Source: Heteronotia binoei (lineage: Eukaryota). From it: a stretch of 64,000 bases of DNA. Positions 1,026-59,346 of the stretch are shown here, one piece after another (the stretch's first letter is position 1; each line of letters begins with the position of its first letter). The stretch covers positions 167,772,001-167,836,000 of the forward strand of contig NC_083223.1 of the NCBI RefSeq assembly GCF_032191835.1, given 5' to 3'. A program made the position numbers and the translations under genes. Below the pieces are notes generated by a model that was not told the origin of the DNA, did no database searches, and saw only the letters and a program-made list of their open reading frames with translations.

Positions 1026-1527
1026 TAGGCATTTTTTTGAGCAGGAATGTGCAGGAATGCAAAACTGCCCCATGACGCAGAGTGGTAAAGCTGAAGTACT
1101 GCAGTCCAAGCTTTCTGCTCATGACCTGAGTTCAATCCTGGCAGAAGCTGGGTTCAGGTAGCTGGCTCAAGGTTGACTCAGCCTTCCATCCTTTCAAGGT
1201 CAGTAAAATGAGTACTCAGGTTGCTTGGGGGGGAAATGTAGATGACTGGAGAAGGCAATGGCAAACCACCCCCTAAAAAGTCTGCCACAATGTCACCACA
1301 GAGTCAGAAACGACTGGTGCTTGCACAGGGGACTACCCTTCACCTTTTTATGTGCAGGAATACCGTTCCAGCTGGCTTGACTTCAGGGGGTGTGGCCTAA
1401 TATGCAAATGAGTTCTTCCTGGGCTTTTTCTCCCAAAAAAGCCGTGTGAAACAATGGTGACATCAGGGGTGTGTGGCCTAATATACAAATGAGTTCCTGC
1501 TGGACTTCTTCCACCACGAAAGCCCTG
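1026..1527. mobile_element. hAT-type MITE (CAGGGCTTTTT family) interrupted by a Sauria SINE
   Basis: Right end AAAGCCCTG. 8-bp TSD ATTC(C/T)AGT at 1018-1025 and 1528-1535. Two internal CTAATAT(G/A)CAAATGAG repeats. Confidence 0.75.
1067..1349 (+). mobile_element. Sauria SINE nested in a hAT-type MITE
   Basis: tRNA-like head, Sauria core and TGCACAGGGGACTACC tail. 12-bp TSD ATGTGCAGGAAT at 1047-1058 and 1350-1361. Confidence 0.88.
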
Positions 1528-1970: not shown

Positions 1971-2594
1971 AACACACACATGAAGCTGCCCTATATTGAA
2001 TCAATCCATCAAAATCAATATTGCCTACTCAGACTGGCAGGGGCTCTCAGGGTCTCGGGCTGAGGGCTTTCATATCACCTACTACATGATTCTTAATGGA
2101 GACGCTTGAGATTGAATCTGGGACCTTCTGAAGAAGCCCTTTCAGTACGCCACAGGCCCTCCCGTAAATGTGATGCATAGAGTCTGTCCTCCAAAACTGC
2201 CAAAGAACTGGTCCCTGTGTAGACTGAAGATTCTGAGAGAGCTCCAGGCCCCACCTACAGGCTGGCAACCATATCTCTTCCCTCTTCCTCCTTGCCCTCT
2301 CAAATGCTGTTTCAAGAAGCTGGGAGGAAATTGAAAGGATAAAAGATGACCATGAGGTGCCAATTTCTACTTTTAAAATCAGCTCTCCCTTTAGTAGCAT
2401 TTTAACTATCTGTTTCTACAAATGTGTAAAGAAATAATCAGCTCAGTCCTAATCATGCATAAATAGGCATGTTAAAAGACTTAGGAAAAAATGTCCTTTC
2501 CATGTAACTGTGGTTTAATGTTGGGAAAAGACAGCTTTTCATGAGTTGTACGTAAATAACATAACCATTAAGTTCCTAATAATCGTGGCAGAGC

Positions 2595-2966
2595 AGTTTT
2601 TAAACTAAATCTTGGGGGAAAGCCGACAGATGAAATGTCTCTGGTTCGGGAGGACTCGTCTCAAAGAGATGAAGGGTTAGCTGCTATTTTTCTACCGGGT
2701 AACGGACCAGAGTTGTCCACTGTGAAGGTGACAAACAGTATGGACTATCTGCCAGAGTCTCGAGGCGGCAGGAGGAAGGTGGCGGGCCTAGCTTGCCTGG
2801 CAAATTATAGATGTTTGTATGCAAATGCTAGAAGTGTTCGAAGTAAAATTGGTGAATTGGAATGTTTAGTGTTGAGAGAAAACCTAGACATTGTGGGAAT
2901 TTCAGAAACTTGGTGGAATGAGGAGAATCAGTGGGACACGGTGAATCCTGGATATAAGCTATATCG
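2595..2966 (+). mobile_element. CR1 LINE fragment (end of ORF1 region and start of ORF2 endonuclease)
   Basis: CLYANARSVRSKIGELECLV...DIVGISETWWNEENQWDTVNPGYKLYR is the APE endonuclease N-terminus typical of CR1. Confidence 0.85.
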
Positions 2967-4173
2967 TGGGTTCTGGTTCGGGGCCCCGAGGGTGCCACTT
3001 CGACCCACCCGGATCTCGACGGATAAGACTGCAATGGAAAACAGGGTGTATTTTACTAAACAGTTTGGGCAAGTCCAATTCAACAGTCACTTTATTGATC
3101 ACCCGTTTGATCTTGAAGGGGCCGAGGAACCGGTAGGCTAGCTTCCGAGATGTCTGGGGAAGCGGAAGATTCTTGGTTGACAAAAACACAGTCTCTCCAA
3201 CCTTGAAATCCCACCCCGGGCTGTGCTTTTTGTCGAATTGGGCTTTATAGTCTCTTTTGGCCTCTTCCAGGTTCTCCTGGATGACTTTCCAGGAGCTCTC
3301 TAATGATTTCCACCATTGCTGGCATTCTGGCGAGATAGGGGGGGTGCTTCCGCCCGGGAGCGTTGGGAAAGGCTTCCCCTCGTACCCGTGCACAGCCTGG
3401 AACGGGGAGACTTTTATTGAACCAAGCAGGCTGTTGTTGTAGCTGTATTCGGCAAAGGGTAACAGCTCTACCCAGTTGTTTTGCTGAAAGTTCACATAGC
3501 ACCGGAGGTACTGCTCCAGAAGCCCGTTCACCCGCTCACTCTGCCCGTCCATCTGCGGGTGGTAGGCAGAGCTTAGTCCCTGTTCCATTCCCAGTAATTT
3601 GCAGAACTCCCGCCAGAAGTTGGCAACGAACTGTGGCCCGCGGTCACTAATGACCTTATCGGGGAACGAGTGGATCCGGGCCACGTGCACGAAGAACAGA
3701 TGGGCTAACTCTTTGGCGGTGGGGAGTTTTTTGCAGGGGATGAAATGGGCTTGCTTCGAAAATGTGTCCACCACTATGAGAATCACTGTCCGCCCTTTTG
3801 AGGGTGGTAGCTCCACGATAAAATCCATGGAAATCACCGACCAGGGTCGCTCTGCCGAGGGAAGCGGTTGGAGCAGCCCGGGCACCTTCCCTCCCCTCCG
3901 TTTGGCCATTAAACAAGTTGGACACGTTTGCACAAATTCAGAAATGTCTTTTTTCATGTGGGGCCACCAGAACTGCCTGTGCACCATGTGTAGGGTTTTC
4001 ACATAGCCATAGTGGCCGGCCAGTTTGCTGGTGTGGCAGTGTTGTAGCACTTCCACCCGGAGTGATTTCGGGACGTAAAGTTTCCCATCATGGAACCAGA
4101 ACCCCCCGTCCCCTTTTACCAACCCCTCCGGGCGGTCATTCCCTTCCGCCTCCGCCTCCGAGATCAACTTGCT
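2962..4173 (-). pseudogene. Gypsy integrase, C-terminally truncated
   Basis: HHCC (H..LAGH...CPTC), DDE (SMDFI, SDRGPQF, GQSERVN) and GPY/F (RFLGPFKI) motifs. It ends at PEPEPTI* at the deletion junction, where a chromodomain would normally follow in this clade. Confidence 0.9.
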
Positions 4174-4556
4174 CCCCCCCCCACGGGGTGCTCGGGGGCT
4201 TTGCCGTCTGTGAACGGGTTTGGACTGCGCCCGCCACTGCCTCAGGGGGGATGAGAGAGTCTATGACTTCCTCGCGTTCACTATCGTGCTGCGGGAGCCG
4301 AGAGAGCGCGTCGGCTAGAAAATTCTTCGACCCTGGTATGTGACGGAGGGTGAAGTCAAATTTGGCGAAGAACCCGGCCCACCGTATTTGCTTGCCGGTC
4401 AGTTTCCGGCGCCCTGTGAGCGCTTCTAGGTTTTTGTGGTCAGTCCAGATCTCGAAGGGAACCCTAGCCCCCTCCAACCACGATCGCCATGTTTTCAGGG
4501 CGAAGGTGACGGTGTAGGCTTCCTTGTCCCACACCGACCAGTTCCTTTGCTCGCCT
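4174..4556 (-). pseudogene. Gypsy RNase H C-terminal part and linker
   Basis: WDKEA, WTDHKNL and NFLADALSR motifs. A +1 indel in a G9 run (plus-strand C 4174-4182) separates it from integrase. Confidence 0.88.
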
Positions 4557-5717
4557 GTAGGCGCAGGGTCTTAGGCAGCCCCCCTCGTCCTTCTGCATCA
4601 GTATGGCTCCTACGGCCGTGTCGGAGGCGTCGCATTGGACCACGAAGGGCTTGAGCTCATTCGGGTGCACTATCACGGGTTCGCTCGTGAAGAGCCGCTT
4701 TAAGGTCTCAAACGCTTCTTGGCACTGGCTAGTCCAGTGGAGTTTCGCCCCAGGTTTTTTCGCTTCGGGCCCCCTCCCCTTGGTCTGCAATAGGTTGGTG
4801 AGGGGCAGGGCCACCTTGGCGAACCCCTGAATGAACGTTCTGTAGAAATTTGTGAACCCGAGAAATGATTGGAGCTGTCTACGTGTCCTCGGGGGTTCCC
4901 ACTCTAACACTGCTTGGATTTTAGCCGGATCCATGGCTAAGCCCTTCCCGGACACTCGGAAGCCTAGGTAGTCTAATTCTTCCTTGTGGAACTCACATTT
5001 GGACAATTTGGCGTATAGTTTGTTCTCATAAAGGGTGGTTAGTACCTCCCGGACCAGTTTGACATGGGAGGGCATGTCTTTCGAGTAAATAATGATGTCA
5101 TCCAGGTACACCACCACCCCCTTGTACAGGTACTTCCGGAGGACCTCATTGATAAAGTTCATAAAGACCCCGGGGGCCCCTTGCAGCCCAAACGGCATTA
5201 CTAGATACTCAAACTGTCCCATCGGCGTGTTGAACGCCGTCTTCCATTCATCCCCCTCCTTGATCCTGACTCTAAAGTAGGCGTCCCGTAAGTCTAACTT
5301 GGTGAAAATGGATCCCTCCGAGACGCTGCTCAACAAGTCTTTGATGAGGGGGATGGGGTAGGCATTGGACATCGAAATCCCGTTTATCCCGCGAAAATCT
5401 GTGCAAAGCCTAAGACTTCCATCCTTTTTCTTGCGGAATAGGACGGGGGCCGCATGGGGGGCCGTTGCTGGGCGGATGAACCCCCGACGGAGGTTTTTGT
5501 CGAGGAACTTTCGCAATTCCTCCTTTTCCGCCCAGCCCATTGAATACAACTTGGCTTTTGGAAGCAGCTGCCCTGGGATGAGCTCTATGGCGCAGTCAGT
5601 GGCCCGATGGGGTGGTAGCTCATCCGCTTCAATTTCGCTAAAAGCCCCTTTTAGGTCTCGATACTCCCTCGGGATCGTTCTCACTTCCTCTATGGTCACG
5701 CATATTTTTTCATTTTT
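4557..5717 (-). pseudogene. Gypsy reverse transcriptase and start of RNase H
   Basis: KLDLRDAYFRVRI, MPFGLQGAPGVF, VYLDDIIIYS and VQCDASD motifs. The frame breaks at 4557/4556 (CAY|...EQRNWSVWDKE), where a short deletion has removed the usual LS(R/K)KF-type residues. Confidence 0.9.
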
Positions 5718-6214
5718 GGGGGGGGCTGGGGTCCCCAGGACTCTCGCCATAGGTGGGAGGTGCACCGCCGATCCAGGAAGTCAATAGTGTGCTCCCCCCA
5801 CTGAATGTCCGGCTGGTGCCTTGCTAGCCACCCCACTCCTAGCACAATGTCAAATGAGCAGGAAGGCGCAATCACAAATACTTCTGGGTCCCAATGGTCC
5901 TCTACCCCCATGAGTATCTCCTGCGTTCTGTCGATGCAGGGTTCCCCCTTCATTCGTGTCCCGTCCATCTGCTCAAATTCGAGGGGCCGGGGTAGGCGCT
6001 CGCGCCCAATTCCTAACATGTCCACAAACCGCGGGGTGATTAGCTCCCGCGTGCACCCAGAGTCTATGAGTGCTCGGGCATGTACAAAGTGCTTTAATTC
6101 CACATTTAATAAAGTCAGTGGGATGAACATCAGTTCCCCCGAGATTCTCACCCGTAATGGTGCCGCTTTCTCCGGGACCTGCCGCTGGGCACCTTCTAGT
6201 ACAGGTCGTCCTCG
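5696..6214 (-). CDS. Gypsy aspartic protease, -1 frame relative to gag
   Basis: ALIDSGCT active site and DIVLGVGWL motif. The frame is open from the slippery site at 6214-6220. It stops after a C8 run (plus-strand G 5718-5725), where one extra C would join it to RT. Confidence 0.88.
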   Translation of the reverse strand, partial: RGRPVLEGAQRQVPEKAAPLRVRISGELMFIPLTLLNVELKHFVHARALIDSGCTRELITPRFVDMLGIGRERLPRPLEFEQMDGTRMKGEPCIDRTQEILMGVEDHWDPEVFVIAPSCSFDIVLGVGWLARHQPDIQWGEHTIDFLDRRCTSHLWRESWGPQPPPKMKKYA

Positions 6215-7674
6215 TTTCCCGACGGCTCGGCCTCCCAGGTATCGTCCCCAAGCTCTTCCAGCATTATAGAATCCTCGTCAAGCACCATCGACAGAGCGGT
6301 GCTGCTGTGGCTCGACTCCTTCGGCTTGCTGGGCTTCTTGGTGCCACCGCTTGGCCCTTTCGTGGCGGGGGTGCTGGATCTCGCCCGGTCCGGGCAGTTG
6401 GCGGCCAGGTGGTTCGGGTCCCCGCACTGGTAGCACTTGCGGGGCCCCGGAGTGATCTTGGGGCTCACCCCCCCTCCTGCTTTCTTGGGCTCCACTTTCG
6501 CAGCCGGCCGCCCGTCTCGGCTGGAGCGCGGTTGGAGTCCCTGGCGTTGGATCGCCACTTCCTTCATGTTGTTTTCGATCTCCCCCGCCAGCTGGATCCA
6601 GCCCACCAAGGTGTCGGGGCAGACCTGCCCCAGCGCCCGGTCCAGGATGCCCGGGTTAAGCCCTTTCTTGTACGCCCGGATCTTCATGGCCTCGCTCCAG
6701 CCCCTTATTTTGCGGCTGTGGTTCCGGAACTCTAGGGAGTACTCTCGGATCGACTTCCTCCCTTGGCGCAGCCCCTCGAGGGCTGCTATGGCCACGGTCT
6801 CCCTTAGGGGGTCTTCGAATTGGGACAGGAGGGCTTGCAGGAACCCCACCACGGTGGCCACTTCCAGCCCGTTCGCCTCGAAGAGGGTCACGTACCAAAG
6901 TTGGGCTTCCCCCTCCAACTTCGACCCCAGGTAGGCCACGCGGCTGCGTTCGCCGTGGAAGGACACCCCCCAGTAGTGCATGTAGCTGTTGGCCTGGATG
7001 ATGAAGTACTCTACTTTGTCTGGGCTGCCGTCGAACGTGACGAGAAGCTCCCGGGTCTTTACCCGGGGTGCCGGGGCTTGGGGGGCGCCCGGCGCCGCGG
7101 GCGCTCCCGGTGCAGCCGGAGCCACCGGTGCCACTGGGATGACTGGCGCGGTGGGCTGCTGCGGGATCGGGGCCGCCGCCCCGCCGGCGCCCGCGATAGC
7201 GCGGTCCACTTGCTTCTGCACCTCTTTTAGTATCAGAGTCATGGTGAGGTTCATCTCCCGGCGGAGGTCACAGCCCAGGATCTCGACCTCCCATCGGAGT
7301 TCGTCCATGGTGGCGGCTTTCAGGGAGGAGGCTCGCGATTCCTCGTCTTCACCATCTCGGGAGTCGCAGCTGTCTCTCCTCCGGCGTGGCCCCGGGCCTT
7401 CCTCGGGCTCCCCCCTTCCTCGGGGTCCGTCCGCTGGCTCGGGCGAGCCGGGTGGTGCATCCGGGTCCCCGGGGTTGCGGAGGAGGTTGGCGTGGCGTTG
7501 CACGGCCTCTTCCATCAGGGTAGTGGAGGTGCGGTGCTTCCACTTCTGCGGGGTGATGAAGAGCACTTGGCTGCTCACCTTCCGTGGCTTGCGTTTCTCG
7601 GTAACGTACCAAGCCGGGGACCCTGGCAGCTCTGGTATGCAGGGCTCTCGGTCGTCCGGTGCCTCTGTAGCCAT
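6196..7674 (-). CDS. Gypsy Gag, intact 492 aa (predicted coiled coil, capsid, CCHC zinc knuckle)
   Basis: Uninterrupted ORF with a retrotransposon capsid-like segment (TFDGSPDKVEYFIIQ...LRQGRKSIREYSLEF) and the knuckle CYQCGDPNHLAANC. Confidence 0.92.
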   Translation of the reverse strand: MATEAPDDREPCIPELPGSPAWYVTEKRKPRKVSSQVLFITPQKWKHRTSTTLMEEAVQRHANLLRNPGDPDAPPGSPEPADGPRGRGEPEEGPGPRRRRDSCDSRDGEDEESRASSLKAATMDELRWEVEILGCDLRREMNLTMTLILKEVQKQVDRAIAGAGGAAAPIPQQPTAPVIPVAPVAPAAPGAPAAPGAPQAPAPRVKTRELLVTFDGSPDKVEYFIIQANSYMHYWGVSFHGERSRVAYLGSKLEGEAQLWYVTLFEANGLEVATVVGFLQALLSQFEDPLRETVAIAALEGLRQGRKSIREYSLEFRNHSRKIRGWSEAMKIRAYKKGLNPGILDRALGQVCPDTLVGWIQLAGEIENNMKEVAIQRQGLQPRSSRDGRPAAKVEPKKAGGGVSPKITPGPRKCYQCGDPNHLAANCPDRARSSTPATKGPSGGTKKPSKPKESSHSSTALSMVLDEDSIMLEELGDDTWEAEPSGNEDDLY

Positions 7675-7727
7675 TCGCTAGAAGTAACTTTCGCCGATAA
7701 GCCCCTTGTTAGGGTTCACTTTCAAAA

Positions 7728-8198
7728 TGTCAGCGTAGTGTTCATTGAGATTCCAAAACAAAAGAACTCTTTCTTCAGAAATAAGTTTCTTTATTGGATA
7801 CACAATGTTTCTACTGGAGAAGACCATTGAAAGTGATAACATACATTGGATGGGTACTATCATATGTTGGGGGTACATCAAAGGCAGGGCCCTTTAAATC
7901 ACTTCTTAAAACAAAAGTTGCTTTCTCCCTCAGAGGTGTTTGATTCACACGCTTGCTATCTGTCTTTCCTGAGTCTACCCACACTCCCCCTTTCACTTGG
8001 CGGCCTTGCCTGGCCTGGCCTGGGAAACGGCGCGGTGTCTGTGTTCTGCCAGCCGTTTATTACCCCTGGCGCCCAAGGCCTCCCTCCCTCTGACATACCT
8101 TGCATTCTACTACAGGGCAAAAAGGTTAGTCTTAAACAAATAAACAGTATAGGCAATATGGTTAGTATCGATAGGAAGCGATTGAACACAAGCTGACA
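7728..8198 (-). repeat. 5' LTR of the Gypsy element (471 bp)
   Basis: Terminal inverted repeat TGTCAGC...GCTGACA. AATAAA on the minus strand at 7790-7795. Host CR1 3' sequence resumes immediately at 8199. Confidence 0.8.
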
Positions 8199-8241
8199 GT
8201 TGGCCTGATCCAACATGGCTTCTCTTATGTTCTTATGTTCT
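8199..8241 (+). mobile_element. CR1 3' terminus
   Basis: TTGGCCTGATCCAACATGGCTTCTCTTATGTTCTTATGTTCT is a squamate CR1-type 3' end with a (TTCTTATG)n-like tail. Confidence 0.7.
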
Positions 8242-8716
8242 ATTAAAAGCTGAGAGTCCTAGGGCTGCCAGATCCAGGGTGGGTAACTCCTGATTTGGTG
8301 GCAGAGTCTGGGGAGGACAGGTCATCAGTGGGGTGTGATGCTATATATTCTACCCTCCATTTTCTCTAGGGTCACTGATCTCTGTAGTCTGCAGACAAGC
8401 TGTAATTCCAGGGGATCCCCTGGCCTCACCTGGATGCTGGCATCACTAGCCAAGACATTTTTTTTCTTCAGGCAGCTGACAACTCTATAGTGATACATGG
8501 CTTTTGATCTAATAAGGATCCAATTGGTCAAATTTTAACACAGAAACATAACTCTTTGCATTATTTAAAAGAAATTATAGTAATAGTTCTCTCTTTTCAT
8601 ATTTGTGAGCAAACAGTAGAAAACTAATGCAACTTTACCACATTCATGTACTGCCATCTCCTGGATATTGTAAGAAACTAAGTGTAATATGAAAACACTC
8701 CCTAATTTCATTACCT

Positions 8717-9012
8717 GGGGAAAGGAAAAGTCCCCTGTGCAAGCACCAGTCGTTTCCGACTCTGGGGTGACACTGCTTTCACAACGTTTTCACGGCAGAC
8801 TTTTTATGGGGTGGCTTGCCATTGCCTTCCCCAGTCATCTACTTTCCCCCCAGCAAGCTGGGTAATTTTACCGACCTCGGAAGTATGGAAGGCTGAGTCA
8901 ACCTCGAGTCGGCTACCTGAAAACCCAGCTTCTGCCAGGGATCGAACTCAGGTCGTGAGCAGAGCTTAGGACTGCAGTACTGCAGCTTTAACACTCTGTG
9001 CCACGGGGCTCC
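8717..9012 (-). mobile_element. Sauria SINE
   Basis: Near-identical to the copy at 1673-1970. TSD TTCATTACCT at 8707-8716 and 9013-9022. Confidence 0.9.
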
Positions 9013-12310: not shown

Positions 12311-14893
12311 CAGGGCCATAGCCAGAATTTGGAAGGTGGGGGGGATTTACATTTTTGCACAGCACTGATGCCAAGCCCAGTGCCCCAATGACCTTTCCTC
12401 TAGTGGCTCCCTCCCTGCCTACCTCTCTCTCTTGCCACCGCCTTCCCCTCTCCCCCCAACCAACTTGCTTCCAGGCTGGGAGCAGAAGCAGCCACCAGGC
12501 CCTTTAACTTGCGTGGGGGGCTGGGGACTGCTTCTGCTGCCGGCCCACGCGCTGTTTTAGTGGCAGGGAACAGAGGGCTGTGGGGAGCTCACCACCACTC
12601 TCTCTTCCCCAACAGAAAAATAACGTGCTGGACGGCAGCAGAAGAAGCCCCCGTGCGAGTTAAGGGCCCGCAAAAAAGTTGATCAACGGGTCCTGTAAGT
12701 AGCAGAGGGGCTGAGGGCTGCTTCTGCTGACAGGAGAAGCTCTAGGATGAATAGGCCCTAGGCAAGCGACCGCCACACTCCGATCGCCCCCAGCTGCTAT
12801 CAAGGTGCTCTGCTCGCTCCACACTACCACCACCCGCTCCGCGCTCTGCTTGCCCACCACTGCGGCGCTCCTTCTCCTCCCCCCACTCGCTGTGACTGCT
12901 GCCGGCCCCCGCGCTGCTTTAGTGGCAGGGAACGGAGAGCTAAAGCAAGCTCGCCACCAACCTCTCTTCCCCATCAGTAACATAACGTGCGGGCTGGCAG
13001 CAGAAGCAGCCTCCCGCGCGAGTTAAGGGCCTGCAAAACAGCTGATCCACAGGCCCTTTAAGTAGCGGAGGGGCACTGGGGGCTGCTTCTGCTTGCTCAC
13101 CTCCCGCCATGCTCGGTTTGCCTGCCACCACCGCGCTCCCCTGCTCGCCGCAACTGCTGCCAGCCCATGCACTGTTTTAGTGGCAGGGAATGGAGGGCTG
13201 CGGTGGCCTCACCTCTGCACTCTCTTTCCTACCAGTAAAATTACACACAGGCCAGCAGCAGAAGCAGGCCCCTGTGCAAGTTACAGCTGATCCACAGGCC
13301 CTTTAAGTAGTGGGGGGGGGGGGGGGGGCTGGAGGCTGTTTCTGCTGCCAGGAGTGGCTCTAGGGCGAATAGGCCCTAGGCACACACACACACACCCCGC
13401 GCCTCCTGCCACCACACTCCGCCCACCCCCCACTGCCATACTCCGCTCCATTGCCCCCCATGGTGCTCTGCTCCCCCGCTTGCCGCCCCTCCTCCCCCCC
13501 TCACTGCGACTGCTGCTGGCCCAGGCGCTGTTTTAGTGGCAGGGAAGGGAGGGCTGTGACAAGCTCACCACCACCCTCTCTTCCCCATCAGTAAAATAAC
13601 GCACGGGCTGGCAGCAGAAGCAGGCCCCCATGCAAGTTAAGGCCCTGCGAAACAGCTGATCCACAGGTCCTTTAAGGGGGGGGGGCTGGGGGCAGTTTCT
13701 GCTGCCAGGAGCGACTCTAGTGCGAATAGGCCCTAGGCAGGCAACCCCCCCCCGCCTTCCAGCCATCGAACTCTGCTCACCCCCAGCTGCCACTGCAGCG
13801 CTCTGCTTGCTCACCTCCCACCACACTCAGCTTGCCTGCCACCACCGCGCTCCCCTGCCACCACGCTCCCCTGTTCACCACCCCTCCTTCCCTCGCTCAC
13901 CACGACTGCTGCCAGCCCATGCACTGTTTTAGTGGTAGGGAACGAAGGGCTGTGGTGACCTCACCTCAACACGCTCCTCCCCACCAGTAAAATTACACAC
14001 AGGCCAACACCAGAAGCAGGCCCCTGTGCAAGTTAAGGGCCCGTGAAACAGCTGATCCATGGGCCCTTTAAGTAGTGGGGGGGGGGCTGAGAGCTGCTTC
14101 TGCTGCCAGGAGTGGCTCTAGGGCGAACAGGCCCTAGGCTGGCGACTCCCCCCACCCATGCCTTCTGCCACCGCACTCTGCCCACCCCCAGCTGCCATGC
14201 CCCCCCCCCGTGGTAATCTGCTCCCCCACTTGCTGCCCCTCCTCCCCCCGCTCGCTGCAACTGCTGCTGGCCCAGGCACTGTTTTAGTAGCAGGGAAGGG
14301 AGGGCTGTGGCGAGCTCACCACCACCCTCTCTTCCCCACCAGTAAAATAACGCACGGGCTGGCAGCAGAAGCAGCCCCCCATGCAAGTTAAGGGCCTGCG
14401 AAACAGCTGATCCACGGGCCCTTTAAGTATTGGGGGGGGAGGCTGGGGGCTGTTTCTGCTGCCAGGAGCGACTCTAGGGTGAACAGGCGCTAGGCAGGCA
14501 ACCTCCCCCCCCCGCACCCCCGCCCCGCCTCTGCAGTGCTCAGCTTGCTTGCCCCCGCCGTGCTTTGCTCCCCCTGCTCGTCACGACTGCTGCTGGCCTG
14601 CGCGTTGTTTTAGTGGCAGGGAAGGGAGGGCTGTGGGAGCTCACCGCCACCCTCTCTTCCCCACCAGTAAAATAACACATGGGCCGTCAGCAGAACCAGC
14701 ACCAGTTAAAGGGCCCACGGATCAGCTGATCGACAGGCCCTTTAACTCAGGACAGGCTGGGACTTTATCCCCCCCCCCGCCCCCCCCAAGCAACCTCTCC
14801 ACTGTCCTTGAGCTATGGCAGAGGCCCCAGAATCAGGGGGCCTCTTCCAGAAGTAAAAGGGCTGCGTCCTCACAGGCCCCCCCCCGTAGCCTG
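12311..14893. mobile_element. hAT-like non-autonomous element carrying an internal GC-rich tandem array
   Basis: Starts CAGGGCCATAGCC and ends GTAGCCTG. 8-bp TSD T(A/G)TCTCGA at 12303-12310 and 14894-14901. The right TIR is eroded. Confidence 0.55.
12450..14760. repeat. Degenerate tandem array of about 7 units of 260-400 bp with higher-order dimer structure
   Basis: The anchor TG(T/C)TTTAGT(G/A)G(C/T)AGGGAA recurs at about 12553, 12915, 13173, 13529, 13925, 14280 and 14606. Confidence 0.9.
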
Positions 14894-15777: not shown

Positions 15778-16251
15778 TAAGGTTGCCAATCCCCAGGTGG
15801 GGGCAGGGGATCCCCTGGTTTGGAGGTTCTTCCAACGCTTCAGGGTCATCATTAAGCATAGGTGGGGAAATGTCTGCTGGGCACTCCATTATTCCCTATG
15901 GAGACTGAGTCCAATATGGTATAATGGAGAATTGAGCCATGGGTATCTGGGTCGGGGGGGGGGGCATTTTTTGAGGTAGAGACACCAGATTTGCAGCATA
16001 GTATCCAATGACTCTCCTCAAAAGACCTCCAAGTTTCAAAAAGTTTGGACTAGGTCCAATTCTATGAGCCCCAAAAGAAGGCACCCCTATCCATTATTTC
16101 TAATGGAGAGAAGACATTTAAAAGGTGTGCGGTACCTTTAAATGTGACGGCCAGAACTCCTTTTGGAGTTCAGTTATGCTTGTCACAACCTTGCTCCTGG
16201 CTCCACTCCCAAAGTCTCCAGATATTTCATGAATTGGACTTGGCAACCCCA
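15778..16251. mobile_element. hAT-type MITE (TAGGGTTGCCA family) about 400 bp upstream of the SMYD3 ATG
   Basis: Closely similar over its length to the copy at 58818-59346. Ends TAAGGTTGCCAA / TTGGCAACCCCA. Confidence 0.8.
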
Positions 16252-25535: not shown

Positions 25536-26890
25536 CAGGGGTGTCAAACCTATGGCTTACAAGGCCAGAACCAGCCCACCCAGGGTTTTAATCCAGCCTG
25601 CAACTCTCTTCTCCCCTCCTCCCCTGCCGGTCCTCACCCTTCTGAGCTCAAGCTGCAGCGGAGCTAATGCAGCAGAGGGTGGGGCTGCTCAAATTCACAG
25701 CTTGCTCGGTTTTCTGGTAATGGAATTCCACTCTGAGGGCTATCATTCCAGTCCCAGAGTATCTATCTGGGCCCAGAGACCTTAATGGAAAATCTATTCC
25801 ACATATTCTTTGCCACTTTTTTTGTGCTGCAATGTATTGCAATGAAGCTCAGGCAAGTCAATTGGCATTCCTGGTTCCCATTATCTCCAATGGGACTCCA
25901 AGCCTTTCCCACTGTTAATCGAATCCCCATATCTTCATTTTAGACAGGCATCTTTTAAGGGCAGGGGGAAGGTTTGGGACTGACCATGGTTAAAATATAG
26001 AATTCTACAAACTCAAGGAAATCCAGTTTTATAGAGAAATATTAGTTTTAACACAAACACCCTCCTAATGTGGGGCTCCAATGCAGAACAAGTTCTGATG
26101 AGGACTACAAAAAGCATTACCTCAAGGAAAGGAAAGGTCCCCTGTGCAAGCACCAGTCGTTTCCAACTCTGGGGTGACATTGCTTTCACAACATTTTCAC
26201 AGCAAACTTTTTATGGGGTGGTTTGCCATTGCCTTCCCCAGTCATCTACACTTTCCCCCCAGCAAGCTGGGTACTTATTTTACCGACCTCGGAAGGATAG
26301 AAGGCTGAGTCAACCTGGAGCCGGCTACCTGAAAACCCAGTTTCCGCCGGGGATTGAACTCAGGTCGTGAGCAGAGTTTAGGACTGCAGTACTGAAGCTT
26401 TAACACTCTGCGCCACAGGGCTCTTACCTCAAAAAACCTGAGATCCTGGAAAGCTACTGCCACTCTGAGTAGACCTGGAGGGAAAGAAGCTTGCAATGCC
26501 CAGCCATGTTTTCCAGGGCTCAAAGCATTTTATATTTTGAGTTTATATTTTTAGTTTTTGCTATGATCGTTGTGCTTTTTCTTGATGTTTTATTTTTAAA
26601 ATTGCATTGTCAAATTCCATTATTCCTGCAGGCACCTTTTAAGGGCAGGGGTTTGGAAGGTGTCAGTTATCAAAGACGGTTAAAAATAAACAAAAGTGTC
26701 ATAAGAGTGTTACTGATTTAAGCATGTTTGTATTTTAATTTTAAAAATTATACCTTTAATTGTGTTTGTATCCTTTTTAAAGTTTATATCTCCACTACCT
26801 GGCATTACATTTTATGACACTCATGGCCCGGCTCAACAAAGTCCCACTTATGTCAGATCTAGCCATCACAACAAATGAGTTCAATATCCG
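25536..26890. mobile_element. hAT-Charlie-like element in TFB2M intron 4
   Basis: Left end CAGGGGTGTCAAAC and a degenerate right end GAGTTCAATATCCG. TSD ATT(T/C)AGAA at 25528-25535 and 26891-26898. Confidence 0.68.
26126..26423 (-). mobile_element. Sauria SINE nested in a hAT element in TFB2M intron 4
   Basis: Same consensus as the other copies. TSD TTACCTCAA at 26117-26125 and 26424-26432. Confidence 0.9.
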
Positions 26891-42224: not shown

Positions 42225-44172
42225 GGCCAGGATTGTGTCTGCAAATTCGCGCCCGGCACAATTGTTTAAAATAATTGTACATTAACTACGCTGCCCCAAG
42301 GCAGACCAAATGTTAGAGAATTAGAATAGGCTGCGAGGCTTTTGCGAAATATTTTGCAGACAAAATCACGTTGCTCCGCCAGGACCTGCCCATCACATTA
42401 GATACAGTACATGAACTGGAGGCTCCGTGCCTGTCTTCTGGTTTAGTCCTGGACCACTTCAACCCACTCAGCCTGGAAGAAGTTGACAGAATTCTCTCCT
42501 CTGCACGCCCAACAACTTGCAATTTGGACCCATGCCCCTCTTGGCTAATTAAATCTTGCCTGAGGGAGCTTAGATGTCCTTTATGGGACATCATAAATAG
42601 ATCCCTCCTGGAGGGGCGTTTTCCAACACCCTTAAAAGAGGCTATGGTCCGCCCCTCCTGAAAAAAAGTACAGCAGATCCGGCCGAATTGGCAAACTACC
42701 GACCAGTCTCTAATTACCGTTTTTAGGTAAAATTATTGAGAGGGCAGTGGCGTTGCAGGGTTTTCTGGATGACGCTTCCGTCCTAGACCCTTGCCAGTCC
42801 AGCTTTCGTCCAGGTCACAGGACGGAGACAGTGCTGGTCACCTTGGCGGACAACCTCCAGCGGCATCTGGATCGAGGTGGTGCTGGCGGTGCTGATGCTG
42901 TTAGATCTGTTGGCCGCGTTCGACACGGTTAACCATCAGCTGCTGACCCGCCGCCTCACCAACGTAGGGGTTAGGGGGTTGGCTTTACAATGGCTTTCCT
43001 CCTTCCTCGAGGATCGGGGACAAAGGGTGGCAATCGGGGGTGAGCTGTCCCAGAGGCGCACACTAGAGTGTGGGGTGCCTCGGAGCAGTTCTCTCACCAA
43101 TGCTATTTAATATCTATATGCTCCCTCTTGCCCAGATTGCCCGGAGGCATGGGCTTGGGTGTCACCAGTACGCGGATGACACCCAGCTCTATCTGCTAAT
43201 GGATGGCCGGCCTGGCTGCGTCCCAGGGAATTTGGACCTGGCACTGCAGGCCATGGCAACTTGGTTAAGGCTGAGTGGGTTGAAGCTGAATCCAGCGAAG
43301 ACAGAAGTCCTGTGCCTGGTTCGGGGCATTCTGGGGAGGGAAATATCTCTCCCAGGTCAGGAGCTTGGGAGTTCTACTGGAGCCTTCATTATCAATGGAG
43401 GCCCAGATAGCAGCCACTGCTAAATCAGCCTTTTTTCATCTGAGGCGGGCAAGGCAGTTGGCCCCCTTCCTAGAGCGCCAGGACCTGGCAACAGTGATTC
43501 ACGCAACAGTCACCTCGAGACTGGATTACTGTAATGCCCTCTACATGGGGCTGCCTCTGTGCCGAACCCGGAAGCTGCAGCTGGTGCAGAACGCGGCAGC
43601 TAGGCTGCTATTGGGGCTCCCAAAGTGGGAGCACATACAGCCAGGGCTGCGTGGACTGCACTGGTTGCCAGTTACATACCGGATTCGTTACAAAGTGCTG
43701 GTTATTACCTTTAAAGCCCTATATGGCCGAGGACCTGCCTACCTGAGGGACCGTCTCTCCCCATATGAACCCCAGAGATCACTGAGGTCAGCAGGGAAGA
43801 ACCTGCTGACCATCCCCGGGCCGAAAGAGGTAAAACTACAGAGTACCCACATGCGGGCCTTCTCTGTTGTAGCTCCACACCTATGGAATCAGCTCCCGGA
43901 AAAAACACGGGCCCTGCGGGACTTTGATCAGTTTCGCAGGGCCTGCAAGACCATTCTTTTCGGGATGGCCTTCACCGATTAAAAGAAAGAGACTGCTTAA
44001 GTAATTTTACCATCTGCTGAAGTAGCACCAGGATGTTAATTTTAATAAGCTTAGAATTTTAATTAAATTGCTATATTAGTTATTGTTTTTAAACATTGTT
44101 GATCTAATGTTGTTAGCCGCCCTGAGCCTGCTTCGGCGGGGAGGGCGGGATATAAATAAAATGATTGATTGA
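42225..44172 (+). mobile_element. L2-clade LINE, 5'-truncated, frameshifted RT
   Basis: PTTCNLDPCPSWL, LDLLAAFDTV, QYADDTQLY and SRLDYCNALYMGLP motifs. 3' tail GGATATAAATAAAATGATTGATT. Confidence 0.9.
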
Positions 44173-44944: not shown

Positions 44945-46300
44945 CATTGCATTTTATTTGATTTATATCCCGCCCTACCCCACCAAAGCGGGCTGAGGGC
45001 AGCTCACAACATAAAAATTCTAACAATAAAATTCAAGAATTAAAATACAATAATAATTTACATAATTAAAACAACTAATATATCACATCAATCAGTCTCA
45101 GTGTGCTATCTTATAGTCTTCCGTCAGAATATTTCAATTTTTCAGTGCCTGTCAGTTATAAGCCAACTGGAAGAAGACTGTCTTACAGGCCCTGCGGAAC
45201 TGTCCAATGTCCCGCAGGGCCCTGACCTCTTCCGGTAACTGGTTCCACCAGTAAGGGGCTGTGATCGAGAAGGCCCTAGTTGACTTCTGTGATCGAGAAG
45301 GCCCTAGTTGACTTCAACCGGGCCTCCTTTGGCCCGGGGATTACAAGCAGATTTCTAGAGCCAGATCGCAGCACTCTCTGGGGAGCACATGGGAAGAGAC
45401 GGTCCCTAAGGTAGGCAGGTCCTAGGCCATATAGGGCTTTAAAGGTGATAACCAGCACCTTGTACCGGACTTGGTATATTATTGGCAGCCAGTGCAGTCT
45501 CCGGAGGCCCGGCTGAATGTGCTCCCGTCTAGGGAGCCCTAATAACAGCTGAGCGGCGGTGTTCTGCACTAGCTGCAACTTCCGGGTTTGGCACAGGGGC
45601 AGCCCCATGTAGAGGGCATTACAGTAATCCAACCTTGAGGTGACCGTTGCATGGATCACTGTTGCCAGATCGTCCTGCTCCAGGAAAGGCACCAACTGCC
45701 TCGCCCGCCTATGATGAAAAAATGCAGACTTAGCAGTGGCTGCTACTTGGGCCTCCGTGGTTAAGGCAGGCTCAAGTAGTACCCCCAAGCTCTTGACCCT
45801 GTGCGCCATTGTCAGTGGCACACCGTCGAGAGCTGGTAGGGGAATTTCCCCTCCTGGACCACGGCGACCCAAGCAAAGGACCTCTGTCTTCGCTGGATTT
45901 AGTTTCAACCTACTCAGCCTGAGCCATCTAGCCACGGCTTGTAATGCCAGGTCCAGGTTTTCTGGGACACAGTCAGGCCAGTCGTCCATGAGTAGATAGA
46001 GCTGGGTGTCATCAGCGTACTGGTGGGAACCCAGCCCATACCTCCAGGCAATCTGGGCAAGGGGGCTCATGTAGATGTTAAACAACATTGGGGAAAGAAC
46101 TGCCCCCTGAGGCACCCCGCAATCAAGCGTGTGCCTCCGGGACAACTCACCCCCAATCGCCACCCTTTGTCCCCGACCATCAAGGAACAAGGAGAGCCAT
46201 TGTAAGGCCAACCCCTGAATCCCCGTGTCGGCGAGACGGCTAGTCAGCAGCTGATGGTTGACCGTATCGAACACTGCCGATAGGTCTAACAACATCAGAT
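44945..46300 (-). mobile_element. L2-clade LINE, 5'-truncated, convergent with the previous copy
   Basis: Open RT stretch LDLSAVFDTV...QYADDTQLY...SRLDYCNALY. A 28-bp tandem duplication at 45259-45314 breaks the frame. Tail at about 44945. Confidence 0.9.
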
Positions 46301-48939
46301 AGAAGACTAATGCAAATAAATTGTAGGGGCCCCCTGACGGCAAACTAAATATCTGCCACAATGATGATGTCCTGTCAATTCTGCAGTAACTCTACTAAAA
46401 TTAAAAAAAACCCAGAAAGAATACAAAATTTGTCATGTTACTTGAGATAATGTTACTAGGATTTCTACCAACGAATACAGATAGAGCTGTACACAAACTG
46501 TTTAGTTATATGTTAACTGTGCCACAATTAGTATTTGCAAATTGTAACTAAATGGAAAGCTGAGATTTGCCAGATTTTGAGAAGTGGAAAGATAAATAAG
46601 AAGCTAAATGAATTTGAAGATAACTGGAGAGCTTTTTATGCTTATTATCATTAATTAATTGTTCATATAGTTATATATTTAAATAGTTATATCAGCAACA
46701 ATTAGTATTTGGAATATTATTTTTTCTCATATTATTTATTTATTTATTTACATTAGACTTTTATCCCATCCTCTCTGCAAGCTGACTCAGGGCGGCTTAC
46801 AACAGTCGTTTACACGATTTAAAACAATGTCAATAAAATCTATAAAACATTAAGACAATTAAAATTGTATTACAAACTGTAAGGTTGTCATCCTAAAATT
46901 ATACTCAAAATTAATAAGAATTGTGTCTCTCTAGTTTTTTTAGATAACGATAATGAAAATATACTATGTGAAAATAATAGAATACTATGTGCATAGTGTT
47001 ATCGTGATTTATTATATCATGTATTAACAATTAACAACATTATTAACAATTATCCTTAAAAATGCTTTTTTTTTCTTCTTATCCTTTTTTCTTTATTCTG
47101 TATTTTTATAAAAAGTCAAAAAGAAAATTTAGAAAGAAAAGGGTAAAACAAAGAAAAGGAAAGTAAAATGTTCAAAATATTGCATATAATTTAATAATAC
47201 ATTCAGAAGTGCTAAAATATTTTCTCACACTGAGATGTTCACCCATGGAGGCTGATTATTTTTTAGTTGTACCTGAACACTCCAGTAGAGTTTTGAGTAT
47301 TTCAAATTGGATCTCAGTGCTCAGTTTGAATTATACCACTGAGGAAAGCCAGGTGCCTAAGGTTCTTCCATATGGAGATGTGTATTTTTAAACATGTATT
47401 CATGTAAATGTTCATTTATCTTTATATTGGGATTAAGTAGTTATATGCTGAACCACAGGATTGTTTTTAAATGATATTTTAGCACTTTTGGATGTGTTAT
47501 TACATTATATACAATATTTTGTTCATTTGCACTATGTGCAGTTATAATTCATTTTTTTTCTTTGTTCCAACCTTTTTGGTTACTTTTTTTGGATGCTGTG
47601 TGGACAATGCTCCTCTGTGTGTGGGGGGGAGAAATCCATCCCATTCATTTTTTTAAAATGTCCATATTTTTTTTCAAACTGCCCAAGTTTGTAGAAAAAT
47701 CTCCCATCTCTCAGCATGGCCCTGACCAAAGAGTTAAATATACACAGATGGCACCATGTTGAGAATTAGATATATTGACTGCTGATCTAAAAGTCCCCAT
47801 TCTTGAACTAAAAAAAATTTCAGAGTCTCCAGAGTTAAACTGACGTATCAGATTTTATGAAGAGGTTTGACACAATCTCTTACTGCTGCCACATATCCTT
47901 CCCTGCCTCCCCTTTCTCTGTTGGCTCATCATCCTAACCTGACTTCAGTGACTTAGAATATAAATTTAGCTTTGGTATACTTATGTCCGTAATTAGATTA
48001 TATACTTGTGTTTTGCATGGTAAAGTTTATGGAATATAATTTTTTCAAGGAAAAATAGCAGATACCTGAGAAAAAGGAACCCCTAGATTTTGCTGCAACT
48101 TTGCCGCAACTGCATATGCTATTTCAGCTTTTCTGATAATCACAACAGATTTATCAGGCAACACCCATTTAAGTATTTGTGACATGCTAGGTTGATCAGT
48201 CTACTTAGCAAGATGCTGCTTGCTTGGCAGGAAGTTTCCCTTTGCCAGCTGCAGTGTTAGGATGGGACTGTACAATGTATTTGAGAACATAATATGTCAG
48301 GAGGAAGATAAGTTGTTTACCTTCAGTAAAGTGGATGGTACAAGAACTTACAGGTACAAACTGGATGCTAACTTCAGTTAGAAGTTGTGTAAATTTCCAT
48401 GGATTAATGGAAAAGTGAGGTAAAATTATGAAAGATCTGATTATTTTATTTGTACTGTGCCTCTTCAATGGAATGTTCAAGCTTGCAAACACAAATTATA
48501 ACAGATCAATGCAAAATGATTACAATAAACTTTAGAATCATGATCATCTGATGGAAAAACTGGCAACAGCCATACTTTTCGTTTTTGGTTGTCAGTTTAT
48601 GTCCTTTGGTAGAAAATAGGATGTGTTTTCTTTTCGAAGTTGATTGCTTGCCAGACTTATAGTGGTCTTATCCTTCGTTAATGATCCTTTACAGATACTT
48701 TTTATTTTCACTGTGTACCAATTTCTTCATGAAATGAATCCCTTAAATAATATAATTATTAGTTTCTTGAAATTTGATTCTCGTTATACTGATACAGCAA
48801 TTTTAGTTACCTATTATTTTTCCTTAACTCAGATATAATTTCTCAATTTAACTGTTCTTGCCAGATCCCACATTTATAACTTATTGGAAATCCTGTTGCA
48901 CTTCCAATAAGGGTGTCTCACCACCTCTGCAGCTACCCT

Positions 48940-58817: not shown

Positions 58818-59346
58818 TAGGGTTGCCAATCCCCAGGTGGGGGCAGGGGATCCCCCGGTTTGGAGACCCTCCCCCGCTTCAGGGTCATCAGAAAGCGGGG
58901 GGAGGGGAGGGAAATGTCTGCTGGGGACTCTATTATTCCCTATGGAGATTTATTCCCATAGAAAATCATGGAGAATTGATCTGCGGGTATCTGGGGCTCT
59001 GGGGGTGCTGTTTTTTGGGGTAGAGGCACCAAATTTTCAGTATAGCATCTAGCGCCTCTCCCCAAAATACCCCCCAAGTTTCAAAAAGATTAGACCAGGG
59101 GGTCCAATTCTATGAGCCCCAAAAGAAGGTGCCCCTATCCTTCATTATTTCCTATGGAAGGAAGGCATTGAAAAGGTGTGCCGTCCCTTTAAATGTGATG
59201 GCCAGAACTCCCTTAGGAGTTCAATTATGCTTGTCACAGCCTTGATCTTGGCTCCACCCATAATGTCTCCTGGCTCCACCCCCAAACTCTCCTGGCTGCA
59301 CCCCCAAAGTCCCCAGATATTTCTTGAATTGGACTTGGCAACCCTA
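58818..59346. mobile_element. hAT-type MITE (TAGGGTTGCCA family), young copy
   Basis: Perfect TIR and perfect 8-bp TSD TAAGATGA at 58810-58817 and 59347-59354. Confidence 0.88.

What the first reader, a model, noticed from the sequence alone, without database searches (positions are those of the whole stretch)
5696..8198. Gypsy copy whose surviving coding capacity is Gag plus Gag-protease, i.e. the PEG10 architecture
Seen: the LTR, the 492-aa gag, the frameshift signal and the protease (DSG) are all intact, while every lesion lies downstream (indel at the PR/RT boundary, RNase H deletion, indel before IN, 3' truncation). As written, -1 frameshifting gives a Gag-PR protein of about 659 aa that stops just after the protease. 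Established: mammalian PEG10 is a domesticated sushi-type element expressing Gag and a frameshifted Gag-protease that forms capsids. Inference: this could be an independent squamate proto-domestication. The more parsimonious reading is a recently inactivated copy, since CpGs are retained and only four lesions are seen.
Basis: partly seen in the sequence, partly recalled or inferred. Interest (0 to 1): 0.72.

Follow-up and report, generated by a model that had tools for sequence, protein, structure and literature searches.

The report
Young broken Gypsy retrotransposon copy
This is an ordinary, recently inserted Ty3/Gypsy retrotransposon copy in a lizard-like genome; it looks like the mammalian gene PEG10 only because its first frame break happens to fall just after the protease.

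Summary
On the minus strand there is an open 492-aa gag and an in-frame GGGAAAC slippery site five codons before the gag stop. A -1 frame follows, carrying an aspartyl protease (DSG) and stopping at 5698-5696. A -1 shift would give a 659-aa Gag-PR.

Downstream there are three frame breaks:
- a one-base break in a C8A5 run (5725-5713);
- a 17-nt RNase H deletion (~4557-4549);
- a break in 4199-4158, which contains a 9-nt homopolymer.

No second LTR copy is present.

The PEG10-like reading is not supported:
- RT, RNase H and integrase are all still present, with no in-frame stop and all catalytic motifs.
- CpG content is equally high in gag-PR and RT-IN (0.65-0.79, against 0.16-0.29 in the flanks).
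- By length alone, three breaks all fall downstream of the protease 19% of the time. Two of them sit in intervals holding the element's two longest homopolymers, which are mutation or assembly hot spots.
- The gag stop just after an S-G-N motif recurs in gecko and Anolis relatives, so gag / -1 / pol is the family's normal layout.

Verdict: a recently inactivated transposon copy, of low interest.

The parts
7728..8198 (-). Candidate 5' LTR (471 bp). It starts TGTCAG (8198-8193), ends CTGACA (7733-7728), and has AATAAA at 7795-7790.
   Evidence: Read directly from the sequence. CpG o/e is 0.41 against 0.16 in the adjacent flank. There is no second copy in the window and no primer-binding site was recognised, so the boundaries are inferred.
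6196..7674 (-). gag ORF, 492 aa including the stop codon: a disordered N-terminal part, a Ty3-type capsid and a CCHC zinc knuckle (6435-6421 region).
   Evidence: It aligns without large gaps to squamate gag proteins at 31-55% identity.
6214..6220 (-). Slippery heptamer G_GGA_AAC for -1 ribosomal frameshifting, five codons before the gag stop.
   Evidence: It is the only in-frame X_XXY_YYZ heptamer in the gag frame. The encoded S-G-N-E motif just before the stop recurs in Paroedura and Anolis gag proteins. The same heptamer is reported for PEG10, PNMA3/5 and Rtl3 (PMC11299033).
6158..6207 (-). Possible H-type pseudoknot beginning 6 nt after the heptamer (stem 1 of 7 bp, stem 2 of 6 bp).
   Evidence: It is not significant: 304 of 2000 dinucleotide shuffles give an equivalent pseudoknot, and the MFE z-score is -0.15. 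This part is inferred only.
5696..6277 (-). -1 frame relative to gag (open 6277-5699, stop 5698-5696) encoding the aspartyl protease, with DSG at 6064-6056.
   Evidence: RVP_2, E=1.6e-6; weak DDI1 match. It is 60% identical to the protease part of the Heteronotia binoei protein P0010.
5713..5725 (-). Frame break 1 (PR to RT, one base) inside a C8A5 run. The run also forms an in-frame C_CCA_AAA heptamer (5720-5714).
   Evidence: The closest relative, P0010, reads straight through this point in one frame. The window matches it in the PR frame up to the proline run and in the RT frame from the next residue on.
4558..5714 (-). Reverse transcriptase plus the first part of RNase H, with no stop in frame. 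YLDD is at 5108-5097 and DASD at 4631-4620.
   Evidence: (RVT_1, E=2e-30). Best relative: a Gekko japonicus partial RT at 75% identity.
4549..4557 (-). Frame break 2: the site of a 17-nt deletion within RNase H.
   Evidence: Six relatives (P0008, P0016, P0021, P0134, P0140, P0284) each leave 17 nt unaccounted for at this junction. The two Pfam RT_RNaseH matches abut at profile positions 36 and 41.
4184..4549 (-). Remainder of RNase H and the linker, with no stop in frame. TDH is at 4444-4436.
4158..4199 (-). Frame break 3 (RNase H/linker to integrase). The interval contains the element's longest homopolymer, 9 nt at 4174-4182.
   Evidence: Relatives align in one frame down to 4199 and in the next frame from 4158.
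2962..4173 (-). Integrase (H2C2 zinc finger, DDE core, Tf2-type SH3), with no stop in frame. The ORF ends at 2962.
   Evidence: Anolis relatives end within about 10 residues of the same point.
2900..2961 (-). 3' truncation zone: no polypurine tract and no second LTR follow the integrase stop.
   Evidence: Sequence read. A self-BLAST of 2400-8400 against the whole window finds only itself.

Best explanation
This is a single, evolutionarily young copy of a squamate Ty3/Gypsy (Metaviridae) LTR retrotransposon, inserted on the minus strand.

The family's normal expression plan is a gag ORF that ends just after a G_GGA_AAC slippery site, with PR-RT-RH-IN in the -1 frame. Most ribosomes make Gag, and a minority shift frame and make Gag-Pol.

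This copy was inactivated by four lesions: a one-base break in a homopolymer at the PR/RT junction, a 17-nt deletion in RNase H, a frame break in or near a 9-nt homopolymer before IN, and loss of the 3' end (polypurine tract and 3' LTR).

Because the first break lies just after the protease, the frameshift product, if this copy is translated at all, would be a 659-aa Gag-PR. That architecture is a by-product of where the first lesion fell, not evidence of host recruitment.

Shown: the coding anatomy, the lesions, the lack of decay in RT-IN, the uniform CpG retention, and the family-wide gag terminus. Inferred: that frameshifting actually happens, the LTR boundaries, and the youth of the insertion in years.
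For: - Domain order gag-PR-RT-RH-IN, with Pfam matches in five frame segments.
- No in-frame stop in any segment. DSG, YLDD, DASD, TDH, HHCC and the DDE residues are all present.
- P(no stop in the 2733 nt of RT-IN) falls below 0.05 once neutral divergence exceeds about 2.5%.
- CpG o/e is 0.79 (gag), 0.65 (PR), 0.73 (RT) and 0.71 (RH-IN), against 0.16-0.29 in the flanks.
- By length, all three frame breaks fall downstream of PR with P=0.19. Breaks 1 and 3 lie in intervals that contain the only two homopolymers of 8 nt or more in the element.
- The closest PR-RT relative (Heteronotia P0010) and more distant Gypsy proteins have PR and RT in one frame.
- Gag proteins of Paroedura and Anolis end a few residues after S-G-N-E, like this one. 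30 of 166 gag relatives have G-N in their last 14 residues.
- Active Metaviridae lineages are reported in reptile genomes, and domesticated derivatives are reported as scarce in sauropsids (PMC3670739).
Against: - Copy number in the host genome, presence at the orthologous site in related species, and expression are all untested.
- No near-identical gag or pol protein exists in the protein collections (best 55% for gag, 75% for RT). Family membership therefore rests on moderately distant relatives.
- The LTR has no partner copy to confirm it.
- Intact gag-PR alongside broken RT-IN is also what an early domestication would look like, so the anatomy alone cannot exclude it.
Confidence: 0.86

Rival explanations
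1. At least one of the two homopolymer-associated frame breaks (5725-5713 and 4199-4158) is a sequencing or assembly miscall rather than a real mutation. The real copy would then be less damaged than written. It would still carry the 17-nt RNase H deletion and lack its 3' end, so it would still be dead. The 659-aa Gag-PR stop would then be an artefact.
For: Both breaks fall in short intervals that contain the only two homopolymers of 8 nt or more in the 5.2-kb element. Homopolymer length errors are a common failure of long-read assemblies (general knowledge).
Against: Homopolymers are also real hot spots for replication and reverse-transcription slippage. The assembly technology and reads are unknown. 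The third break is a clean 17-nt deletion that no homopolymer error would produce.
Confidence: 0.2
2. PEG10-like proto-domestication: the host keeps this locus because Gag and frameshifted Gag-PR are useful, for example as capsid-forming proteins or as a restriction factor against related elements.
For: gag, the slippery heptamer and the protease are open and complete while every lesion lies downstream. The heptamer is the one used by PEG10, PNMA3/5 and Rtl3. Squamate genomes do carry annotated gag-only gene models of this family, including a RING-B-box-gag fusion in Anolis.
Against: - RT, RH and IN show no more decay than gag-PR: no stops, motifs intact, same CpG retention.
- The lesion pattern has a chance probability of about 0.19.
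- The frameshift layout is ancestral to the family.
- A candidate LTR is still attached, and no host promoter or intron has been acquired.
- There is no evidence of orthology or expression.
Confidence: 0.03
3. The PR/RT break is not a lesion but a second programmed -1 frameshift site (gag / pro / pol in three frames, as in beta- and deltaretroviruses), using the in-frame C_CCA_AAA heptamer.
For: C_CCA_AAA at 5720-5714 is the only in-frame X_XXY_YYZ heptamer in the PR frame, and it sits exactly where a -1 shift is needed. The shifted product is colinear, without gaps, with the Heteronotia relative.
Against: - The closest relative and all more distant Gypsy proteins examined read PR-RT in one frame.
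- A one-base length change in a C-run followed by an A-run creates this heptamer automatically, so the coincidence is not independent evidence.
- No stable structure is predicted downstream (z = +0.71).
- Low-level slippage there could at most partly mask the lesion.
Confidence: 0.04

Closest known systems
Vertebrate Ty3/Gypsy (Metaviridae) LTR retrotransposons of squamates, e.g. the gecko (Heteronotia binoei, Gekko japonicus, Paroedura picta) and Anolis carolinensis elements behind proteins P0001, P0010, P0014, P0128, P0134
   Same: Same domain order. The gag has a Ty3 capsid, a DUF4939-type N-terminal lobe and a CCHC knuckle. The gag ends a few residues after S-G-N. The protease is of the RVP_2 type, and the integrase has H2C2 and a Tf2-type SH3.
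   Different: Only 31-55% identical in gag and 55-75% in RT, so this is a distinct family or subfamily. This copy has three frame breaks and no 3' LTR.
Mammalian PEG10 (a domesticated sushi-type/chromoviral element)
   Same: Gag plus Gag-protease coding capacity, joined by -1 frameshifting at GGGAAAC, and a DSG aspartyl protease.
   Different: PEG10 has lost RT, RNase H, IN and its LTRs. It is single-copy, orthologous across therians, under purifying selection, and driven by a host promoter (PMC11299033, PMC3670739). Here RT-RH-IN are still present and undecayed, and a candidate LTR remains. No orthology or selection is shown, and gag has no detectable sequence match to any solved structure.
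Retroviruses with gag/pro/pol in three frames (e.g. MMTV, HTLV; from general knowledge)
   Same: Two successive -1 frame changes, each at an in-frame slippery-type heptamer.
   Different: Relatives of this element have PR-RT in one frame. The second heptamer is most simply a by-product of a homopolymer length change.

Membership tests
Ty3/Gypsy (Metaviridae) LTR retrotransposon | gag with a capsid domain and a CCHC zinc knuckle | tested here: met
   Retrotrans_gag E=1.5e-11, Ty3_capsid E=4.6e-10, zf-CCHC E=9.8e-5.
Ty3/Gypsy (Metaviridae) LTR retrotransposon | pol domain order PR-RT-RNase H-IN (integrase last) | tested here: met
   RVP_2, RVT_1, RT_RNaseH(_2), Integrase_H2C2 + rve + SH3_Tf2-1 occur in that order along the minus strand. 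They are colinear with Gypsy polyproteins.
Ty3/Gypsy (Metaviridae) LTR retrotransposon | Two long terminal repeats flanking the internal region | tested here: not met
   There is only a candidate 5' LTR (8198-7728, with TGTCAG...CTGACA ends). No second copy exists in the 64-kb window, which fits a 3'-truncated copy.
Ty3/Gypsy (Metaviridae) LTR retrotransposon | Primer-binding site after the 5' LTR and polypurine tract before the 3' LTR | tested here: inconclusive
   No TGG-initiated tRNA-complementary stretch was recognised between 7727 and 7675. There are no tRNA genes in the window to compare with. No purine tract follows the IN stop.
PEG10-like domesticated Gag/Gag-protease gene | Coding capacity for Gag and a -1 frameshifted Gag-protease at a GGGAAAC site | tested here: met
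   492-aa gag, in-frame G_GGA_AAC at 6220-6214, a -1 frame with DSG that stops at 5698-5696, and a 659-aa fusion. Actual frameshifting was not tested.
PEG10-like domesticated Gag/Gag-protease gene | Loss or advanced decay of RT, RNase H and integrase | tested here: not met
   All three domains are present over their full length, with no in-frame stop and with catalytic motifs intact.
PEG10-like domesticated Gag/Gag-protease gene | Stronger conservation of gag-PR than of the rest of the element | tested here: not met
   CpG o/e is 0.65-0.79 in every segment, and no segment has a stop. The lesion placement has P=0.19 by length. A dN/dS comparison needs orthologues or close copies, which were not available.
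PEG10-like domesticated Gag/Gag-protease gene | Single-copy locus, orthologous across species | not testable with these tools
The protein collections hold no close copy.
PEG10-like domesticated Gag/Gag-protease gene | Expression from a host-type promoter, with protein detected | not testable with these tools
   No RNA-seq, Ribo-seq or proteomic data are available.
Three-frame gag/pro/pol retroelement (two programmed -1 shifts) | The pro/pol frame change is shared by relatives | tested here: not met
   Heteronotia P0010 and P0021, P0030, P0039, P0078, P0133 and P0140 read PR-RT in one frame.

The most novel reading that the evidence does not exclude
The copy is transcribed from its remaining LTR and makes Gag plus a 659-aa Gag-PR that the host has begun to use. 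One possible role is as an interfering capsid protein against active members of the same Gypsy family, in which case this would be a very early stage of a PEG10/Fv1-type recruitment in a squamate.
Probability: 0.03. Interest if true: 0.6.

Novelty: new member of a known kind. Interest (0 to 1): 0.13.

Why it matters
If the domestication reading were true, it would be a rare sauropsid parallel to PEG10. It would also catch a recruitment at its very first step, which would interest people who study how hosts capture retroelement capsids. As it stands, the locus matters in smaller ways. It is a clean example of how lesion placement in a young transposon can mimic a domesticated architecture. It suggests that the GGGAAAC gag/-1/pol layout known from PEG10, PNMA3/5 and Rtl3 extends to squamate Gypsy families. 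It also flags two homopolymer sites worth checking for assembly accuracy.

Tried and rejected
- Exact look-up of the four ORF products in the 15-billion-protein collection found none.
- The word search with whole gag was swamped by low-complexity words and gave one hit. Repeated on residues 205-492, it gave only two Heteronotia hits at 40-53% identity.
- The exhaustive HMMER search with gag found 1997 relatives, but none above 55% identity. Copy number in the source species could therefore not be estimated.
- The look-up of encoding contigs, meant to fetch DNA of related elements so that frameshift sites, LTRs and PR/RT junctions could be compared at the nucleotide level, was closed.
- Self-BLAST for a second LTR or another copy in the window found nothing.
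- MFE folding downstream of both heptamers showed no unusual stability (z = -0.15 and +0.71). My own pseudoknot scan found a canonical-looking H-type knot, but 15% of shuffles did too.
- Rfam found no frameshift element or other family.
- Sequence search of solved structures found nothing for gag and only weak DDI1 matches for the protease.
- A search for a repeat that would pin the 5' LTR boundary found no other copy in the window.
- There are no tRNA genes in the window to test for a primer-binding site.
- The SMYD3-intron context was not tested. Exons are too short for the ORF-based tools, and I did not type a reference protein from memory.
- Structure prediction was not used, because the domain identities were already clear.
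Full report
**What is there.** The finding lies on the minus strand of a 64-kb window that has no N runs. Reading 8400 to 2400 in three frames gives five consecutive open segments.
- gag, 7674-6199, 492 aa, stop at 6198-6196.
- A segment in the -1 frame, open 6277-5699, stop at 5698-5696.
- A third segment, again -1, open 5780-4467.
- A fourth, +1, open 4570-4139.
- A fifth, +1, open 4260-2962.

Pfam assigns them as follows: Retrotrans_gag / Ty3_capsid / DUF4939 / zf-CCHC; RVP_2 aspartyl protease; RVT_1 plus the first 60 positions of RT_RNaseH_2; RT_RNaseH positions 41-105; and Integrase_H2C2 + rve + SH3_Tf2-1. This is the Ty3/Gypsy order gag-PR-RT-RH-IN.

**The frameshift site.** In the 79-nt overlap of the gag and protease frames, the gag frame reads G_GGA_AAC at 6220-6214, five codons before the stop. 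It is the only in-frame X_XXY_YYZ heptamer (Y = A or T) in the whole gag frame. The protease DSG is at 6064-6056.

The same heptamer is reported as the slippery sequence of PEG10, PNMA3, PNMA5 and Rtl3, followed by a structure 5-8 nt downstream (PMC11299033). Here a canonical-looking H-type pseudoknot can be drawn 6 nt downstream, with stems of 7 and 6 bp. However, 304 of 2000 dinucleotide shuffles give the like, the MFE z-score is -0.15, and Rfam finds nothing. The heptamer is therefore established and the stimulator is not.

**The lesions.** Tblastn and blastp of related Gypsy proteins against the window locate the breaks.
- Break 1. Heteronotia binoei P0010, the closest PR-RT relative (60% identity in PR, 67% in the adjoining RT), reads through in a single frame. 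The window follows it in the protease frame up to a proline run and in the RT frame from the next residue on. The one-base break therefore lies inside the C8A5 run at 5725-5713. More distant Gypsy proteins also have PR and RT in one frame.
- Break 2. Six relatives each leave 17 nt unaccounted for between 4557 and 4549, which indicates a 17-nt deletion in RNase H.
- Break 3. Relatives align in one frame down to 4199 and in the next from 4158. That 42-nt interval contains the element's longest homopolymer, 9 nt at 4174-4182.
- 3' end. The integrase ORF ends at 2962, within about ten residues of where two Anolis relatives end. No polypurine tract or LTR follows, and a BLAST of 2400-8400 against the whole window finds only itself.

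**The LTR.** The stretch 8198-7728 begins TGTCAG, ends CTGACA, and carries AATAAA at 7795-7790. Its CpG o/e (0.41) lies between that of the element body and the flank. That makes it a reasonable 471-bp LTR. With no partner copy and no recognisable primer-binding site, 'intact LTR' remains an inference.

**Is gag-PR preserved better than the rest?** No.
- Each of the five frame segments has zero in-frame stops. The RT YLDD, the RNase H DASD and TDH, and the integrase HHCC and D-D-E residues are all present.
- About 4.4% of single-base changes in the RT-IN codons would create a stop. The chance of seeing none in 2733 nt falls below 0.05 once neutral divergence passes about 2.5%. RT-IN has therefore hardly decayed.
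- CpG o/e is 0.79 in gag, 0.65 in PR, 0.73 in RT and 0.71 in RH-IN, against 0.16-0.29 in the flanks. This is uniform and high, as expected for a recent insertion.
- By length alone, three frame breaks all fall in RT-IN with probability 0.19.
- Two of the breaks sit in short intervals that hold the only two homopolymers of 8 nt or more in the element. The longest run in gag-PR is 7 nt. Mutational or assembly hot spots thus explain the placement without invoking selection.

**Is the Gag / Gag-PR layout special to this copy?** No. The exhaustive search with gag found 1997 relatives. The named ones are squamate proteins from Anolis carolinensis, Paroedura picta, Heteronotia binoei and Eublepharis macularius. 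Paroedura and Anolis gag proteins end a few residues after S-G-N-E, just like this one, and 30 of 166 relatives have G-N within their last 14 residues. The gag stop shortly after a Gly-Asn pair, which is the protein footprint of GGA-AAC, is therefore a family trait. In an intact element the shifted product would be Gag-Pol. Active Metaviridae lineages are documented in reptile genomes, while domesticated derivatives are reported as scarce in sauropsids (PMC3670739).

**The second heptamer.** The protease frame has exactly one in-frame slippery-type heptamer, C_CCA_AAA at 5720-5714, right at break 1. A -1 slip there would give a product colinear with the Heteronotia relative. This tempts a two-frameshift (gag/pro/pol) reading. 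But a one-base length change in a C-run followed by an A-run produces that heptamer automatically. Relatives read through in one frame, and nothing stable folds downstream (z = +0.71). I rate it at about 4%. At most, occasional slippage could partly mask the lesion.

**What could not be done.** No near-identical protein exists in the collections. The exact look-ups failed. The best gag identity is 55% and the best RT identity 75%, to Gekko japonicus. Copy number, orthology, nucleotide-level comparison of frameshift sites and LTRs, and dN/dS are therefore all untested, as are expression and raw reads. The host-gene context (SMYD3 intron 1) was not checked. The source species is unknown. The nearest relatives are geckos, and nothing suggests a human contig.

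The pieces were searched apart.

**Verdict.** The best explanation, at about 0.86, is a recently inserted and recently inactivated Ty3/Gypsy copy whose PEG10-like coding capacity is incidental. There is a side possibility, at about 0.2, that one or both homopolymer breaks are assembly errors. Interest is low.

Noticed in passing
Protein P0271 (Anolis carolinensis LOC107983628 isoform X1, XP_016853407.2) and P0124 (isoform X4, XP_062829756.1): In this Anolis gene model, a RING finger and a B-box (a TRIM-like N-terminus) are fused to a Ty3-capsid gag of the same broad family. NCBI names the gag-only isoform 'retrotransposon-derived protein PEG10'. Its C-terminus keeps the S-G-N-E motif. It may be a better squamate candidate for gag domestication than the window's copy.
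   Followed up: partly
window 5714-5720 (minus strand): An in-frame C_CCA_AAA slippery-type heptamer lies exactly at the PR/RT frame break. It is probably a by-product of the homopolymer length change, but it could allow low-level translational bypass of the lesion.
   Followed up: partly
window 1067-1334, 1669-1973, 8709-9011, 26115-26427: Four copies of a SINE-like repeat of about 300 bp (81-91% identical, both orientations). One lies only 0.5 kb upstream of the element.
   Followed up: no
window 12496-14745: A GC-rich array of diverged tandem units with a period of about 360 bp (72-84% identity between units), found by self-BLAST. Tandem Repeats Finder reported nothing at score 100 or above. 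It accounts for the GC peak at 12-16 kb.
   Followed up: no
window 45279-46361 (minus strand); 42892-43951 vs 45180-46298: A 361-aa ORF with a reverse-transcriptase domain (RVT_1, E=1e-21), probably a non-LTR retrotransposon. A 1.1-kb inverted duplicate at 76% identity lies nearby.
   Followed up: no
window 2635-3141 (plus strand): A 168-aa ORF on the opposite strand spans the element's 3' truncation point. It has no Pfam match and is probably a chance ORF.
   Followed up: partly
window 8199-8245 (minus strand): The flank ends, right at the candidate LTR start, with a motif (a repeated ACATAAGA unit followed by GGATCAGGCCAA) that I recall from memory as part of a common squamate repeat. If so, the element inserted into an older repeat. 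No other copy is in the window.
   Followed up: partly
window 15778-16219 vs 58818-59270: Another dispersed repeat pair, about 450 bp at 81% identity.
   Followed up: no
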